Source: Octopus bimaculoides (Eukaryota). Taken from it: a DNA stretch of 60,020 bases. Of the stretch, positions 18,146 through 60,020 are shown piece by piece. The stretch is from assembly GCF_001194135.2 (NCBI RefSeq), contig NC_068986.1, positions 75,085,424 to 75,145,443 of the forward strand, read 5' to 3'. Under the pieces are notes generated by a model. It was not told the DNA's origin. It worked only from the letters and a program-made list of their open reading frames with translations, and ran no database searches. How positions within the stretch are numbered: position 1 is the first letter of the stretch; each line of letters starts with the position of its first letter. The position numbers were made by a program, and so were the translations under genes.

Positions 18146-19391
18146 TAAACATGAATAATTGAATGGTTGCTTAGGTGTTTGTGTGGCTGTAAAGATAGAT
18201 TGAGTGAACGTTTGTTGGAAATGTATTTATTTTTAGCGGAAAATATCTTCGCATTTTGCCTAATTAGATTAGAAAAAAGCTTTCATGTTGTGTGGGTGCA
18301 TCGATTTTGCTGAGAATATCTATGACAAGAGATCGGCACCAGAGATATGGCCTTTCTGTTAACATCGGAAATGTTAAAGCATATCTTTATATCTTTTTTT
18401 TTTCTCTTCATTTTCTGTACTTTTTATTATTTTCTAAGTGAGTTTACTACCTCCCATCTATCGTTCAAATAGTTTAGTGCCAATTCATACGCTGCACATT
18501 CTTTTATATGGATTGTTTTTGTTCACCTTGTGTACAAATATTTGTGTATTTCTCGGGTAATACAACGCAACAAAAATATTTGGAGTTGGTTCATATGATT
18601 TCATTTCAAATACAACATCACAAATTGTCAATAGATATGTATTTTAATTAGGTATACCTTTTTACGATATTGTTATATATGTTCCGACATAAGTTCAAAC
18701 ACGTAGGCATTAGTTTAGTTTTTTTTTTTTTGTTATTTCTTTTTAGTTAAATGAATATAAAATAGTCACTTCATTTTAAAAGGGATTTGAATCCAATATA
18801 AATAGCTCCAACCAGAAATCAAAAGAACAGTGTATGAATTTTGTTCAGCGTGAGCTCATCTTTGCATCCACGTTCNNNNNNNNNNNNNNNNNNNNNNNNN
18901 NNNNNNNNNNNNNNNNNNNNNNNNNNNNNNNNNNNNNNNNNNNNNNNNNNNNNNNNNNNNNNNNNNNNNNNNNNNNNNNNNNNNNNNNNNNNNNNNNNNN
19001 NNNNNNNNNNNNNNNNNNNNNNNNNNNNNNNNNNNNNNNNNNNNNNNNNNNNNNNNNNNNNNNNNNNNNNNNNNNNNNNNNNNNNNNNNNNNNNNNNNTA
19101 TGTTCCGACATAAGTTCAAACACGTAGGCATTAGTTTAGTTTTTTTTTTTTTGTTATTTCTTTTTAGTTAAATGAATATAAAATAGTCACTTCATTTTAA
19201 AAGGGATTTGAATCCAATATAAATAGCTCCAACCAGAAATCAAAAGAACAGTGTATGAATTTTGTTCACCGAGAGCTCATCTCTCGTTCCATGTTCCTCC
19301 CACGCTCACTTTTTTTTCCATGTTGACTGCAAGCTCAAATTTCGAGTATGAAATTTGTTCACCTTGCGCTTATCTCTTCGCCAAAGACCAC

Positions 19392-19630
19392 TGTTGTGTC
19401 GACGCCTCCAGGCGAAGAAGTAGGATCTCCCAAGACATATAAAAAGAGGTAGCCTAGCCGTGGTAGGAGTGTTGAGTAGCGGTTAAGTATCAGTTGAGTA
19501 GCAGTCGAGTAGCAGTTGTGTGGTGGTTGAGTAGAGATCATCCGAACGTGCTAGATAGCAGTAGCTTGAGGCATAGCAGTGGCGACGAGGATGAGATCCT
19601 ACTTCTTCGCCTGGGTGCGTCGACACAACA
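19392..19630 (+). mobile_element. TGTTG..CAACA element, copy 1: LTR-like unit + tRNA-Ser PBS + 38-bp terminal inverted repeat
   Basis: TIRs 19392-19429 and 19593-19630 match at 36/38. TATA-like TATAAAAAG present. PBS TGGCGACGAGGATG at 19580-19593 follows CA+1 nt. Flanks ACCAC/ACTAC. Confidence 0.8.
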
Positions 19631-19828
19631 ACTACACTGGCGGCTTTGAAGATATATGTGTTTGTAAAACACTAGACTAAATATATTACAGTACTTATTT
19701 TTGGCTAACGTGATTCTAAGCTCAACTACCTTCTACGTCAACTTAAGTGAACATCTTTGAAATCAGGTAACAATTATCCACGGTACTACATTTGATCGAG
19801 AAATCTTCGAAATAGTACTGGTCAGATT

Positions 19829-39967: not shown

Positions 39968-40455
39968 AGTGAGGGCAGCGGACTCGCGGTCATAGGATCG
40001 CGGTTTCGATTCCCAGACCGGGTGTTGTGAGTTTTTATCGAGCGGAAAACACCTAAAGCTCCACGTGGCTCCGGCAGGGGATGGTGGCGAACCCTGCTGT
40101 ACTCTTCCACCACAACCTTCTCTCACTCTTACCTCCTGTTTCTGTTGTGCCTGTAATTCAAAGGGCCGGCCTTGTCACACTGTGTCACGCTGAATATCCC
40201 CGAGAACTACGTTAAGGGTACACGTGTCGGTGGAGTGCTNNNNNNNNNNTCTTACCTCCTGTTTCTGTTGTGCCTGTAATTCAAAGGGCCGGCCTTGTCA
40301 CACTGTGTCACGCTGAATATCCCCGAGAACTACGTTAAGGGTACACGTGTCGGTGGAGTGCTCAGCCACTTGCACGTTAATTTCACGAGCCGGCTGTTCC
40401 GTTGATCGGATCAACTGGAACTCTCGACGTTGTAAGCGACGGAATGCCAAAAACA
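39968..40455 (+). mobile_element. SINE family D (5'-clipped; internal duplication across a 10-N gap)
   Basis: GGGCAGCGGACTCGCGGTCATAGGATCGCGGTTTCGATTCCCAGACC..GGATCAACTGGAAC..GACGGAATGCCAAAAA. Confidence 0.9.
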
Positions 40456-42159: not shown

Positions 42160-42408
42160 TTGCCGCCTCGGATTTATGCAGTTGAAATTAAATCGGGGAT
42201 AACGCAACTCTTCTTCAGTATTCGCAACGCTTCTTTAAATCCTAGATGGCACAGTGTTTTCATGTGTCGCCTCGGATTTACGCAGTCGAAAGTAAATAGT
42301 GGATAATGCAACTCTTCCTAGGTGTCACATTATTTTCATGTGCCACTTAGGGTTTATGTATCGAAATTAAATCGTGGATTACGCAACTCTTCTTCGGTAT
42401 TCGCAATT
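42160..42408. repeat. Three imperfect copies of a ~60-70-bp minisatellite unit
   Basis: GCCTCGGATTTA(T/C)GCAGT(T/C)GAAA(T/G)TAAAT..GGATAA(C/T)GCAACTCTTC at about 42163, 42266 and 42341. Confidence 0.75.
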
Positions 42409-46196: not shown

Positions 46197-46462
46197 GTAG
46201 CACTCCGTCGGTTATAACGACGTGGGGTCTAGTTGAGCCGATCAACGGAACAGCCTGCTCGTGAAATTAACGTGGAAGTGGCTGAACACTCCACAGATAC
46301 GTGTACCCTTAACGTAGTTTTCGAGGAGATTCAGCATGACACAGAGTGTGATAAGGTTGGCCCTTTGAAATACAGGTACAACAGAAGCAGGAAGAAAGAG
46401 TGAGAGAAAGTTGTAGTGAAAGAGTACAGCAGCGTTCGCCACTACCCCCTGTCGGAGTATTA
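46197..46462 (-). mobile_element. SINE family D, 5'-truncated
   Basis: GCACTCCGTCG..GATCAACGGAACAGCCTGCTCGTGAAATTAACG..AAAGAGTACAGCAG. Confidence 0.9.
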
Positions 46463-48473: not shown

Positions 48474-48780
48474 ACTTCGTCGGTTACGAGTTGATCCGAC
48501 CCACGGTACAGCCAGCGCTGAGAAAATTAACGTGGAAGTGGCTGAACACTCCACCGACGCGCGTCCCCTTAACGTAGTTCTCAGGGAGATTCAGCATGAC
48601 ACGGAGTGTAACAAGGCTGGCCCTTTGAAATACAGGTCATTCTCACTTTTGTCAGCTGAGTGGACTGGAGCAACGTGGAATAAAGTGTCTTGCTCAAGGT
48701 CAGAACGCGCCGCCATGAATCAAACTCGTGACCTTACGATCGTGATCCGAATACCCTAACCACTAAGCCACAAGCCTTCA
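48474..48780 (-). mobile_element. SINE with E-type head and body and D-type tail
   Basis: D tail (AAATTAACGTGGAAGTGGCTGAACACTCC..CCCTTTGAAATACAGG) joined to CAGCTGAGTGGACTGGAGCAACGTG..TCTTGCTCAAGG..CCCTAACCACTAAGCC. Confidence 0.85.
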
Positions 48781-48895: not shown

Positions 48896-49273
48896 TTTTT
48901 GTTGGCACTCCGTCGCTTACGACGTCGAGGGTTCCAGTGGATCCGATCAACGGAACAGCCAGCTCGTGAAATTAACGTGCAAGTGGCTGAGCACTCCACA
49001 GACAAGTGTACCCTTAACGTAGTTCTCGGGGATATTCAGCGTGACAAGGCTAACCCTTTGAATTACAGGCACAACAGAAACAATAAGTAGGAGTGAGAGA
49101 AAGTTGTGGTGAAAGAGTACAGCAGGGTTGGCCACCATCCCTTGCCGGAGCCTCGTGGAGATTTAGGTGTTTTCACTCAATAAAAAATATCACAACGCCT
49201 GGTCTGGGAATCGAAACCGCGATCCTATGACCGCGAGTCCGCTGCCCTAACCACTGGGCCATTGCGCCTCCAC
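48896..49273 (-). mobile_element. Full-length SINE family D with a 12-bp TSD
   Basis: TSD CAACGCGAGAAT at 48884-48895 and 49274-49285. tRNA-like head GGAGGCGCAATGGCCCAGTGGTTAGGGCAGCGGACTCGCGGTCATAGGATCGCGGTTTCGATTCCC. Confidence 0.93.
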
Positions 49274-58719: not shown

Positions 58720-59542
58720 TCTATAAAACCGTCAACAGCTTGTTTATTTTTATGATTTTTGATTTATTATTAATGTTGCTTAATATGCTTTTCTAAAATT
58801 GCTGCTTCTTTTCAGATATCAGAAAAAGGTAATTAAAATTCATTAAAATGACAGATCTATCGGACTTTGAAAGAGGTAAAATTGTTGGTGCTTGTATGGT
58901 AGGCGCTAGCGAAACAAAAATAGCCGAAATATTTGGTGTATCAAGAAGAACTGTCTCGAAAGTAATGACAGACTTTGAAAACCTCGTTGTTGAAACAAAA
59001 CTCTGGAAGAAAACCAAGAGATTCAGATAGGGACCGTCGGACTCTTACGCGAATTCTACAGCTCCCAAATTTTCTGCAGGGCTTAATGACCACCTCGAGA
59101 ACCCATTTTCCACAAAAACTGTTCGCCGGGAGTTGCACCAAGCCGGATTTCACGGGAAGGCTACAATCAGAAAACCACTACTTTCAAAAGGAAACGTTGC
59201 AAAGCGTTTAGAGTGGAGTAAAAACCTACAGAATTGGTCCCTAGAGCAGTGAAAGAATGTTATTTTCTTGGACGAGTCATCCTTTACCTTATTTCCGCCC
59301 ACCGACCGAATATACGTGTGGAGACAGCCAAAAGAAGCACTTGACCCAGACTGCCTTCTTTCAACTGTTAAACATGGAGGAGGGTCTGTGATGATCTGGG
59401 GGTCTATATCTTGGAAATCCGCTGGCTCAATATTTTCCCTTCATGGCGGAATTAATAGTCAAGACTATTTAAGCATATTATCTGATCAAATTCATCTTTC
59501 AGGATGATAATGTAGCAATTCACACAGCTAAAGTTGTTACTG
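58720..59542 (+). mobile_element. Tc1-family transposon, frameshifted, with an internal deletion; truncated by a gap
   Basis: MTDLSDFERGKIVGA..VSRRTVSKVM, KPLLSK..KRLEW, VIFLDESSF, TVKHGGGSVMIWG, FQDDN.AIHTAK. The left boundary is approximate. Confidence 0.9.
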
Positions 59543-59643
59543 ANNNNNNNNNNNNNNNNNNNNNNNNNNNNNNNNNNNNNNNNNNNNNNNNNNNNNNNNN
59601 NNNNNNNNNNNNNNNNNNNNNNNNNNNNNNNNNNNNNNNNNNN

Positions 59644-60020
59644 TGATCCATGTTTGCAGTTCAGTGAGTGAGACGAGCTGCGGGAAGGCGTGCTTCTCAA
59701 ACGGTGCCCACACCTGTTCACCGTCGTCAATGACGTTCCAGAGATGCCGCAGTCTAAGCGCATGTCTGCGCATCATTAACCACGGCATCGCCAGTCCTCC
59801 ATGTAACGGTTGTTGACAGCAAATGGATCGCCTCACCATCGGAACGCCACCCTTCCACAGAAAGCGGAAAAGTATGCGTTCTAGTTTCGTGATGGTGACA
59901 TCGGGACAAGGCACGACGGTCAGGCGGTAATCGATGACTGATGCGATATACACATTAGCCACCTCCGCCCGGCCTTTTAGAGATAACTTTCTCTCGGCCC
60001 ATGTTTGGCTGAGTTTGATC
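59644..60020 (-). mobile_element. Tx1/L1-clade LINE ORF2 fragment (post-RT region), running off the window
   Basis: W AERKLSLKGRAEVANVYI..LFRFLWKGGVPMVRRSIC..GGLAMP..ALRLRHL matches the L1/Tx1 LS..GR / F.W.G / GGL.LP motifs. Confidence 0.85.

What the first reader, a model, noticed from the sequence alone, without database searches (positions are those of the whole stretch)
19392..19630. LTR/PBS-bearing mini-element with long terminal inverted repeats: a possible retro-to-TIR hybrid family (copy 1)
Seen: 239 bp, starts TGTTG and ends CAACA, with 38-bp TIRs (36/38) and near 5-bp TSDs (ACCAC/ACTAC). Inside, a 187-bp unit TGTTGTGTC..GGCATAGCA with a TATA-like box is followed after 1 nt by TGGCGACGAGGATG. 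Established: this is the reverse complement of the 3' end of tRNA-Ser(GCU) (..ATCCTCGTCGCCA), the primer-binding site of many Gypsy (Mag-type) elements. TG..CA ends with 5-bp TSDs are integrase products. Inference: a 5' LTR + PBS has been capped by an inverted copy of its own left end, so both termini are integrase attachment sites in TIR geometry. It could move as DNA through a Gypsy integrase or Ginger-type transposase, echoing the proposed LTR-to-Ginger transition, or be a recurrent template-switch product of reverse transcription.
Basis: partly seen in the sequence, partly recalled or inferred. Interest (0 to 1): 0.75.

Follow-up and report, generated by a model that had tools for sequence, protein, structure and literature searches.

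The report
Retrotransposon LTR fragment with inverted cap
Two ~240-bp repeats in an octopus scaffold each hold one retrotransposon LTR and its tRNA-Ser primer site, closed by an upside-down copy of the LTR's first 38-52 bases. They are most likely mis-made reverse-transcription products that an integrase still inserted, which is an unusual but small variation on known elements.

Summary
19392-19630 is a 239-bp unit with TGTTG..CAACA ends, 38-nt inverted ends (36/38) and 5-bp flanks ACCAC/ACTAC. A second copy, 91% identical, lies at 29898-30141, with 52/54-nt inverted ends and flanks TTATC/ATATC.

The inner unit passes every LTR test I could run:
- Its ends are TGTTGTG...CATAACA, matching the published TGTTRNR..YNYAACA consensus.
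- It has an A-rich box followed by a GT-rich stretch.
- It is 130-187 bp long.
- One nucleotide after it comes TGGCGACGAGGATG, identical to a published probe for the 3' end of tRNA-Ser(GCU).

Short LTR, Ser primer site and 5-bp duplication together match the Mag lineage of Gypsy.

In both copies the inverted cap is attached where a plus-strand DNA intermediate naturally ends. In copy 1 that is after an 18-nt primer site (17/18). In copy 2 it is after a second LTR 3' end. I therefore favour recurrent strand-switch by-products of reverse transcription, inserted by the parent's integrase (0.45), over a DNA-mobilised Ginger-like family (0.3).

The host genome could not be searched. Copy number, the parent element and empty sites remain untested.

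The parts
19387..19391 (.). Copy 1 left flank repeat ACCAC (putative target-site duplication)
   Evidence: matches the right flank at 4/5; only length 5 fits both copies.
19392..19578 (+). Copy 1 LTR-like unit (187 bp): TGTTGTG ... CATAGCA. It has an A-rich box at 19436-19446 and 11-bp tandem repeats (GTTGAGTAGCA-like) at 19471-19534.
   Evidence: The ends fit the LTR consensus TGTTRNR..YNYAACA, with one mismatch at the 3' end.
19392..19429 (+). Copy 1 left inverted arm (LTR positions 1-38)
   Evidence: pair I1, 36/38.
19580..19597 (+). Copy 1 primer-binding site. 14/14 nt (19580-19593) and 17/18 nt (to 19597) are complementary to the 3' end of tRNA-Ser(GCU), CCA included. It sits 1 nt (G, 19579) after the LTR's terminal CA.
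19593..19630 (-). Copy 1 right inverted arm (inverted LTR 1-38). Its inner 5 nt GAGAT overlap the last 5 nt of the 18-nt primer site.
19631..19635 (.). Copy 1 right flank repeat ACTAC
29893..29897 (.). Copy 2 left flank repeat TTATC
29898..30027 (+). Copy 2 LTR-like unit (130 bp): TGTTGTG ... CATAACA, an exact fit to TGTTRNR..YNYAACA. The left inverted arm is 29898-29949.
30029..30041 (+). Copy 2 primer-binding site TGGCGACGAGGAT (13 nt), 1 nt (G, 30028) after the LTR end
30042..30064 (+). Copy 2 23-nt linker TTCGTAGCTCACACAGCCACTGT of unknown origin, possibly the parent's leader. It is not tRNA read-through.
   Evidence: the 44-nt stretch 30042-30085, which includes this linker, aligned to the tRNA complement gives p = 0.43; no other match in the window.
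30065..30083 (+). Copy 2 second copy of the last 19 nt of the LTR (GTAGTATTGAGACATAACA), ending in the terminal CA
   Evidence: 17 of 18 matches plus one gap to LTR 112-130; 0 of 1000 shuffles reach the score.
30084..30087 (+). Copy 2 4-nt filler AATA between the LTR 3' end and the inverted cap
30088..30141 (-). Copy 2 right inverted arm (inverted LTR 1-52, 54 nt with a 2-bp indel)
30142..30146 (.). Copy 2 right flank repeat ATATC

Best explanation
Each copy is a piece of DNA made by the replication machinery of a Mag-lineage Gypsy LTR retrotransposon that primes on tRNA-Ser(GCU). It holds a complete short LTR, the 1-nt spacer and the primer-binding site. Its right end is an inverted copy of the first 38-52 nt of that same LTR (shown). 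Both outer ends are therefore the same integrase recognition end (TGTTGTG...), facing outwards. The DNA was inserted by integrase-type staggered joining that duplicated 5 bp (shown as 4/5 plus 4/5). How the cap arose is inferred. During reverse transcription, a plus-strand DNA whose 3' end had reached a natural stop switched onto a plus-sense LTR strand. In copy 1 the stop was the end of the 18-nt tRNA-templated primer site of plus-strand strong-stop DNA. In copy 2 it was the terminal CA of an LTR. The acceptor strand was either its own 5' part (fold-back) or a second molecule. Synthesis then ran off at LTR position 1, which creates a perfect second attachment end. On this view the products are non-coding, cannot be copied again through RNA (no second R region, no polypurine tract), and are dead on arrival. 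They are recurrent by-products rather than a self-propagating family.
For: LTR identity:
- The 5' end TGTTGTG and the 3' end CATAACA (copy 2) or CATAGCA (copy 1) fit the published integrase-signal consensus 5'TGTTRNR..YNYAACA3'.
- An A-rich box is followed by a GT-rich stretch.
- The length is 130-187 bp, against a mean of 174 for Mag C training LTRs.

Primer site:
- TGGCGACGAGGATG equals the first 14 nt of a published oligonucleotide complementary to tRNA-Ser(GCT) with CCA.
- It sits 1 nt after the LTR's CA in both copies.
- My rough estimate for a chance 14-mer match to any tRNA end in 240 bp is about 2e-4.

Mag profile:
- In Culex, Mag-lineage elements have LTRs of 119-304 bp, mostly a tRNA-Ser primer site, and almost always 5-bp duplications.
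- Only 5-bp flank repeats fit both copies, joint chance 7e-4.

Cap junctions fall at plus-strand 3' ends:
- In copy 1 the primer site reads 17/18 against the tRNA before the cap continues. The extra 4/5 match has a chance of about 0.016.
- Its last 5 nt (GGGAT in the tRNA copy) can pair with LTR 34-38 (ATCTC) with one G-T pair. That is exactly where the inverted copy begins.
- In copy 2 the cap follows a second LTR 3' end that finishes on the terminal CA (p<0.001), plus 4 filler nt.

Other points:
- Arm lengths differ between copies (38 versus 52).
- Of six variable arm positions, five are private to one arm. The sixth (position 18) is C in both arms of copy 1 and A in both arms of copy 2. So the arms were identical when each copy was made, and they differ by lineage. 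That fits arms being freshly copied from an LTR each time.
- Strong-stop intermediates and integrase-made rearranged cDNAs are documented for LTR elements.
Against: - Only two copies are known. Neither the parent element nor any further copy could be looked for in the host genome.
- Two independent rare by-products lying 10 kb apart in the same orientation is an unlikely coincidence unless such products are numerous.
- Copy 1 can equally be read as a 62-bp deletion derivative of a copy 2-like ancestor. The 17/18 primer site would then be a 1-in-60 coincidence.
- Copy 2 needs at least one further event, the loss of everything between a 23-nt linker and the last 19 nt of an LTR.
- No microhomology is visible at the copy 2 junction.
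- How a fold-back single strand becomes the fully double-stranded two-ended DNA needed for concerted integration is not explained.
- The position-18 argument rests on one site in a variable patch (positions 15-18).
- The host's own tRNA-Ser(GCU) was not available. None was found in the window or in 7 loci, so the match is to the human sequence.
Confidence: 0.45

Rival explanations
1. A true non-autonomous inverted-repeat family (MITE-like). One ancestral LTR + primer site + inverted-cap DNA, shaped like copy 2, was then moved and amplified at the DNA level by an integrase-family DDE enzyme. That enzyme would be a Ginger2/TDD-like transposase or a Gypsy integrase acting on the two outward-facing TGTTG ends. 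Copy 1 would be a 62-bp deletion derivative.
For: - Two copies with the same overall architecture sit at different sites, each with its own flank repeat.
- Two copies within 10 kb suggest a high copy number or local hopping, as cut-and-paste elements show.
- Size, inverted-end length and TGTNR ends resemble Ginger2. One example is the 252-bp non-autonomous Ginger2-1N1_NV with 52-bp inverted ends. TDD-4/5 make 5-bp duplications.
- The structure cannot be regenerated by canonical reverse transcription, so any amplification would have to be at the DNA level.
Against: - No integrase or transposase reading frame was seen in the parts of the window that were scanned. Only ten selected reading frames went through Pfam, which found Tc1 and non-LTR reverse-transcriptase remnants.
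- No further copy was found in 65 kb of Octopus DNA or 83 kb of other animal contigs.
- Metazoan Ginger2 make 4-bp duplications at RTATAY targets, not seen here.
- Position 18 differs between copies in both arms at once, which needs two parallel mutations under cut-and-paste descent.
- Retroviral-type integrases are not known to excise integrated DNA (my knowledge).
Confidence: 0.3
2. An ordinary non-autonomous Ginger2/TDD-type (or other TG..CA) DNA transposon with no retrotransposon ancestry. The internal 'LTR end + primer site' would be a chance resemblance.
For: TGTNR ends, 38-52-nt inverted ends, about 240 bp, a short duplication and no coding capacity are all typical of Ginger2 miniature elements.
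Against: - The 14-nt exact complement of a tRNA 3' end including the post-transcriptional CCA is conserved in both copies (13-14 nt).
- It is placed 1 nt after an internal ..CATAACA that itself fits the LTR 3' consensus and mirrors the element's first 7 nt.
- My rough joint chance for these is about 1e-6.
- Copy 2 repeats that LTR 3' end a second time.
Confidence: 0.07
3. A static rearrangement. An LTR element inserted next to, or into, an inverted solo LTR (head-to-head nesting) and later decayed by deletions. The unit never moved as such.
For: Copy 2 contains two direct LTR 3' ends and one inverted LTR 5' part, as nesting followed by deletion could leave.
Against: - The outer flanks would then belong to different insertion events and should not match, yet both copies show 4/5 flank repeats (joint chance 7e-4).
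- The same architecture occurs twice at unrelated sites.
Confidence: 0.05

Closest known systems
Mag-lineage Ty3/Gypsy LTR retrotransposons (5' LTR + tRNA-Ser primer-binding site)
   Same: Short LTR (130-187 bp) with TGTTRNR..YNYAACA ends. An A-rich signal and a GT-rich stretch. A primer site for tRNA-Ser 1 nt after the LTR. A 5-bp target duplication.
   Different: There is no second direct LTR, no polypurine tract and no gag-pol. The right end is an inverted 38-52-nt copy of the LTR start. The parent element itself was not found.
Ginger2/TDD DNA transposons, especially miniature non-autonomous ones (Ginger2-1N1_NV, 252 bp, 52-bp inverted ends)
   Same: TGTNR..YNACA ends, inverted ends of about 40-50 nt, about 240 bp, and a short duplication made by an integrase-like enzyme. 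TDD-4/5 make 5 bp.
   Different: The octopus units carry an internal LTR 3' end plus a tRNA primer site. Metazoan Ginger2 duplicate 4 bp at RTATAY. No transposase partner is known here.
TRIM/SMART and other non-autonomous LTR retrotransposons; solo LTRs
   Same: Tiny, non-coding, LTR with TG..CA ends, primer site (TRIM), 5-bp duplication.
   Different: TRIMs have two direct LTRs and a polypurine tract and are copied through RNA. Solo LTRs lack the primer site and the cap. Here the second terminal repeat is inverted and truncated.
Aberrant reverse-transcription and integrase products (strong-stop DNA, fold-back or strand-switch cDNAs, autointegration circles)
   Same: The inverted segment is joined at the 3' ends of plus-strand intermediates, and the LTR + 18-nt primer site is exactly the extent of plus-strand strong-stop DNA. 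Such intermediates and rearranged cDNAs are documented in virus-like particles.
   Different: Documented products are extrachromosomal dead ends, mostly circles. Here they are chromosomally integrated with duplications. A concerted autointegration inversion circle cannot hold both a direct and an inverted copy of LTR 1-52, so that specific form is excluded.
DIRS-like retroelements (inverted terminal repeats)
   Same: A retroelement-derived unit with inverted terminal repeats.
   Different: DIRS elements use a tyrosine recombinase, make no target duplication, and have no tRNA primer site or TG..CA integrase ends (my knowledge, not tested here).

Membership tests
LTR retrotransposon-derived sequence (Ty3/Gypsy, Mag lineage) | LTR bounded by short inverted repeats 5'TGTTRNR ... 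YNYAACA3' | tested here: met
   TGTTGTG ... CATAACA in copy 2 is exact; CATAGCA in copy 1 has one mismatch.
LTR retrotransposon-derived sequence (Ty3/Gypsy, Mag lineage) | Primer-binding site complementary to a tRNA 3' end (with CCA), 0-3 nt after the 5' LTR | tested here: met
   14/14 nt in copy 1 (17/18 extended) and 13 nt in copy 2, against published tRNA-Ser(GCT) sequences, 1 nt after the CA. The host tRNA itself was not available.
LTR retrotransposon-derived sequence (Ty3/Gypsy, Mag lineage) | Mag-type profile: LTR about 120-300 bp, tRNA-Ser or tRNA-Leu primer site, 5-bp target duplication | tested here: met
   LTR of 130 and 187 bp, Ser primer site, and 4/5 plus 4/5 flank repeats at length 5 only.
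LTR retrotransposon-derived sequence (Ty3/Gypsy, Mag lineage) | Second LTR in direct orientation preceded by a polypurine tract | tested here: not met
   No direct second LTR exists. Only a 19-nt LTR 3' end is present in copy 2, there is no purine tract, and the right end is inverted.
LTR retrotransposon-derived sequence (Ty3/Gypsy, Mag lineage) | A coding parent (gag-pol) with the same LTR in the same genome | not testable with these tools
   No host genome search is available. There is none in the window or in 148 kb of fetched loci.
Ginger2/TDD DNA transposons (non-autonomous member) | TGTNR..YNACA ends with inverted ends of about 50-180 bp | tested here: met
   TGTTG/CAACA. The arms are 38 nt (copy 1, below the range) and 52-54 nt (copy 2).
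Ginger2/TDD DNA transposons (non-autonomous member) | 4-bp duplication at RTATAY (metazoan Ginger2) or 5 bp (TDD-4/5) | tested here: inconclusive
   The best fit is 5 bp. 4 bp plus an extra terminal A is not excluded. The targets ACCAC/ACTAC and TTATC/ATATC are not RTATAY, with n = 2.
Ginger2/TDD DNA transposons (non-autonomous member) | An autonomous relative with the same ends encoding an integrase-like DDE transposase | not testable with these tools
   No such reading frame appeared among the ten window ORFs scanned against Pfam. The genome was not searchable.
TRIM (terminal-repeat retrotransposon in miniature) | Two direct terminal repeats flanking a primer site and a polypurine tract | tested here: not met
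   The terminal repeats are inverted and there is no polypurine tract.
MITE in the descriptive sense | Short, non-coding, inverted ends, target duplication, many copies | tested here: inconclusive
   The first four features are met. Only 2 copies are known, and copy number in the genome is untested.

The most novel reading that the evidence does not exclude
The units are members of a self-sustaining inverted-repeat family born from a retrotransposon LTR. This would be a 'proto-Ginger': LTR attachment ends re-arranged into inverted-repeat geometry and then moved as DNA by an integrase-type enzyme. It would be a living intermediate of the proposed transition between Gypsy-like retrotransposons and Ginger-type DNA transposons.
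Probability: 0.2. Interest if true: 0.85.

Novelty: new variant of a known kind. Interest (0 to 1): 0.5.

Why it matters
Ginger DNA transposons and Gypsy retrotransposons share an integrase and TGTNR ends, but no structural intermediate between direct LTRs and inverted ends has been described in the papers I could read. These units show one concrete way such geometry can arise. A plus-strand cDNA end switches onto the U3 end of an LTR, which automatically produces a second perfect attachment end that integrase can insert.

If they are only by-products, they are a fossil record of reverse-transcription errors, with strong-stop DNA captured in a chromosome. If they are an amplified family, they make the retro-to-DNA-transposon transition directly testable in a cephalopod genome.

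Tried and rejected
Searches for more copies, all empty:
- Exact degenerate-pattern scans of JGI metagenome contigs, for the arm and for the LTR-primer-site junction, and of viral contigs.
- Protein searches with element translations, hoping for spurious ORFs over other copies. These were a single frame, all six frames of both copies concatenated, and a full HMMER scan of 1.84 billion representatives. The only hit was a low-complexity repeat protein.
- Random sampling of animal DNA through Tc1-transposase homologues. This gave 7 loci and 148 kb, of which 65 kb are O. bimaculoides or O. sinensis. None held a copy, the primer site or the arm.
- A literature search for the arm sequence.
- A look-up of a window ORF to identify the source record.

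Ideas rejected:
- tRNA read-through beyond the primer site in copy 2: alignment score at chance, p = 0.43.
- A concerted autointegration inversion circle as the source. Its topology cannot hold both direct and inverted LTR 1-52.
- Canonical RNA-mediated copying of the capped form. There is no 3' R region for the first strand transfer and no polypurine tract.
- Penelope-like or ribozyme-bearing repeats: no Rfam hit.
- An assembly or library palindrome artefact. Two copies that differ by 9% sit at different sites with their own flank repeats.

Full report
**1. The observation**

The window is AT-rich animal DNA, full of microsatellites and N gaps. A Tc1-transposase remnant in it has its best named relatives in Octopus bimaculoides and O. 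sinensis, so it is an octopus or close relative.

- It is 239 bp long with TGTTG...CAACA ends.
- The arms 19392-19429 and 19593-19630 are complementary at 36/38.
- The flanks are ACCAC and ACTAC.
- The 187-bp unit TGTTGTGTC...GGCATAGCA is followed after one G by TGGCGACGAGGATG.

A 3-mismatch search for the arm finds three sites where shuffles give none. The third site belongs to a second copy at 29898-30141 (244 bp). That copy has arms of 52/54 nt (49 matches, one 2-bp indel) and flanks TTATC and ATATC.

The copies are 91% identical over 182 alignable columns and differ by two blocks. Copy 1 has about 55 bp more of an 11-bp tandem repeat inside the LTR-like unit. Copy 2 has 62 extra bp between the primer site and the right arm. 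BLASTN and nhmmer find nothing else related in the window.

**2. Are the flank repeats real?**

Among lengths 2-10, only 5 bp matches in both copies, at 4/5 each. At random window positions a 4/5 match has probability 0.026, so the joint chance is 7e-4. A 4-bp duplication with an extra terminal A (TATC/TATC and CCAC/CTAC) fits about as well, and two copies cannot decide between them.

The arms within a copy differ by 5-6% and the copies by 9%. These are old insertions, and one decayed position per duplication is plausible.

**3. Is the inner unit an LTR with a primer-binding site?**

Four independent features say yes:
- *End signals.* The published consensus for LTR integrase signals is 5'TGTTRNR...YNYAACA3'. 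The unit starts TGTTGTG and ends CATAACA in copy 2 (exact) or CATAGCA in copy 1 (one change).
- *Internal layout.* An A-rich box (CATATAAAAAG or ACATAAATAG) is followed by a GT-rich stretch. This is the layout reported for animal Gypsy LTRs. The length of 130-187 bp sits by the 174-bp mean of Mag C training LTRs.
- *Primer site.* One nucleotide after the terminal CA comes TGGCGACGAGGATG. This is identical to the first 14 nt of a published oligonucleotide complementary to tRNA-Ser(GCT), TGGCGACGAGGATGGGATTCGAACCCACGCGT. The tRNA sequence itself, ending ...CCTCGTCGCCA, is. The match includes the CCA, which is added after transcription, so the motif reflects pairing with, or copying of, a mature tRNA.
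- *Lineage profile.* In Culex, Mag-lineage elements have LTRs of 119-304 bp, mostly tRNA-Ser primer sites, and almost always 5-bp duplications. The Mag lineage makes up over a third of mollusc Gypsy elements, and O. bimaculoides carries Gypsy elements.

The host's own tRNA-Ser gene could not be checked. No tRNA gene is present in the window or in seven fetched loci.

**4. Anatomy of the caps**

*Copy 1.* The stretch after the spacer reads TGGCGACGAGGATGAGAT, 17/18 against the tRNA complement. The inverted LTR copy continues directly from there. The last five bases of an 18-nt tRNA copy (GGGAT) can pair with LTR positions 34-38 (ATCTC) with one G-T pair, and the inverted copy resumes at position 33. 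LTR + spacer + 18 nt is exactly the extent of plus-strand strong-stop DNA (mechanism summarised).

*Copy 2.* The primer site matches for 13 nt and is followed by these segments:
- A 23-nt linker of unknown origin. The 44-nt stretch that includes it aligns to the tRNA complement no better than chance, so it is not tRNA read-through (p = 0.43).
- A second copy of the last 19 nt of the LTR, ending on the terminal CA (17 of 18 matches plus a gap; 0 of 1000 shuffles reach the score).
- Four filler bases, AATA.
- The inverted LTR 1-52.

So in both copies the inverted segment is joined to a point where a plus-strand DNA naturally ends, and it always runs to LTR position 1.

**5. How it most likely works**

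*Shown:* both outer ends are the same U3-type attachment end, and the insertion duplicated a short target, as integrase-family enzymes do.

*Inferred:* a plus-strand 3' end switched onto a plus-sense LTR strand, either by fold-back or onto a second molecule. Synthesis then ran off at position 1. That creates a second perfect end, which the parent's integrase inserted together with the natural left end.

The capped form cannot be regenerated by ordinary reverse transcription. A transcript would lack a 3' R region for the first strand transfer, and there is no polypurine tract. Each copy is therefore either a separate by-product or was moved as DNA.

Points for separate by-products:
- The two junction types differ but are both mechanistically meaningful.
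- The arm lengths differ between copies.
- The duplication length is Mag-type.
- Of six variable arm positions, five are private to one arm. The sixth (position 18) is C in both arms of copy 1 and A in both arms of copy 2. This is expected if each cap was freshly copied from its own LTR. Under cut-and-paste descent it would need two parallel mutations. It is a single site in a variable patch, so this is weak evidence.

Points against:
- Two rare by-products 10 kb apart in the same orientation is unlikely unless such products are common.
- Copy 1 can be derived from a copy 2-like ancestor by one 62-bp deletion. The 17/18 primer site would then be a roughly 1-in-60 coincidence.
- Copy 2 needs an extra internal deletion.
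- How a fold-back strand becomes a fully double-stranded two-ended substrate is unexplained.

I put the by-product model at 0.45 and a DNA-mobilised family at 0.30.

**6. Other readings**

- *An ordinary Ginger2-type miniature element with a chance primer site (0.07).* The end pattern, arm length and size do resemble Ginger2, for example the 252-bp Ginger2-1N1_NV with 52-bp arms. TDD-4/5 make 5-bp duplications. But the conserved tRNA complement with CCA, placed 1 nt after a consensus LTR 3' end that copy 2 repeats a second time, is very unlikely by chance.
- *Static head-to-head nesting plus deletions (0.05).* This does not explain matching outer flanks at two unrelated sites.
- *A concerted autointegration inversion circle.* This is excluded by topology, because it contains the segment LTR 1-52 only once.
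- *GingerRoot/IS3EU and IS481EU.* These differ in ends or duplication length.

**7. What could not be done**

No tool searches the host genome, so the following all failed to give further copies or a parent:
- Pattern scans of metagenome and viral collections.
- Protein-level searches with translations of the element.
- Sampling 148 kb of animal contigs through Tc1 homologues.

Copy number, parent element, transposase partner, host tRNA and empty sites therefore remain open. They are listed as the decisive next steps.

**8. Verdict**

The structural interpretation (LTR + tRNA-Ser primer site + inverted U3 cap, inserted by an integrase) is well supported. The 'hybrid family that moves as DNA' idea is possible but untested, and the evidence leans to recurrent reverse-transcription by-products.

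It is a new variant of known kinds, of moderate interest. The interest would rise sharply if a genome-wide survey showed an amplified, uniform family or a transposase partner.

Noticed in passing
window 18678-19296: An N gap (18877-19098) is flanked by 198-bp stretches that are 96.5% identical (18678-18875 and 19099-19296). This looks like an uncollapsed haplotype overlap at a scaffold gap, 95 bp upstream of copy 1.
   Followed up: partly
window 30361-30542, 40030-40454, 46200-46457, 48474-48636, 48898-49273: A SINE-like repeat of about 200-380 bp is present at least five times in the window. It also occurs at 90-95% identity in O. bimaculoides loci L001 and L002, and one copy lies 220 bp right of copy 2.
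   Followed up: partly
window 24789-25223(-), 33221-33652(-), 59031-59504(+): Three decayed Tc1/mariner transposase remnants (Pfam HTH_Tnp_Tc3_2). The best named relatives are uncharacterised proteins of Octopus bimaculoides and O. sinensis.
   Followed up: yes
window 4964-6895(-) and 59540-60019(-): Remnants of non-LTR (LINE-type) reverse transcriptase (weak RVT_1 and zf-RVT matches). No LTR-type pol, integrase or Ginger-like reading frame was seen among the ten window ORFs scanned against Pfam; the window was not scanned exhaustively.
   Followed up: partly
window 19471-19534 versus 29970-29985: The LTR-like unit carries an 11-bp tandem repeat (GTTGAGTAGCA-like) that is expanded by about five units in copy 1 relative to copy 2. 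This variable minisatellite inside the LTR accounts for the 187 versus 130 bp length.
   Followed up: partly
window 30070-30102: In copy 2 the second LTR 3' end (AGACATAA) and the inner end of the inverted arm (TTATGTGTCT) form a small near-palindrome around the cap junction. The LTR's 3' end and its positions 44-51 share the 8-mer AGACATAA.
   Followed up: no
window 42240-42392: A 76-bp unit is tandemly duplicated (79% matches) and contains an internal palindrome (CCTAGATGGCACA...TGTGCCACCTAGG). It is possibly another small inverted-repeat element.
   Followed up: no
L004, L005, L006, L007 (ENA assemblies ERZ21867824, ERZ26859072, ERZ22157276): Long contigs filed under metagenome assemblies carry animal Tc1 transposases 56-78% identical to the window's. 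They share no other repeats with the window, so they are host-animal DNA of other species inside 'metagenome' records.
   Followed up: partly
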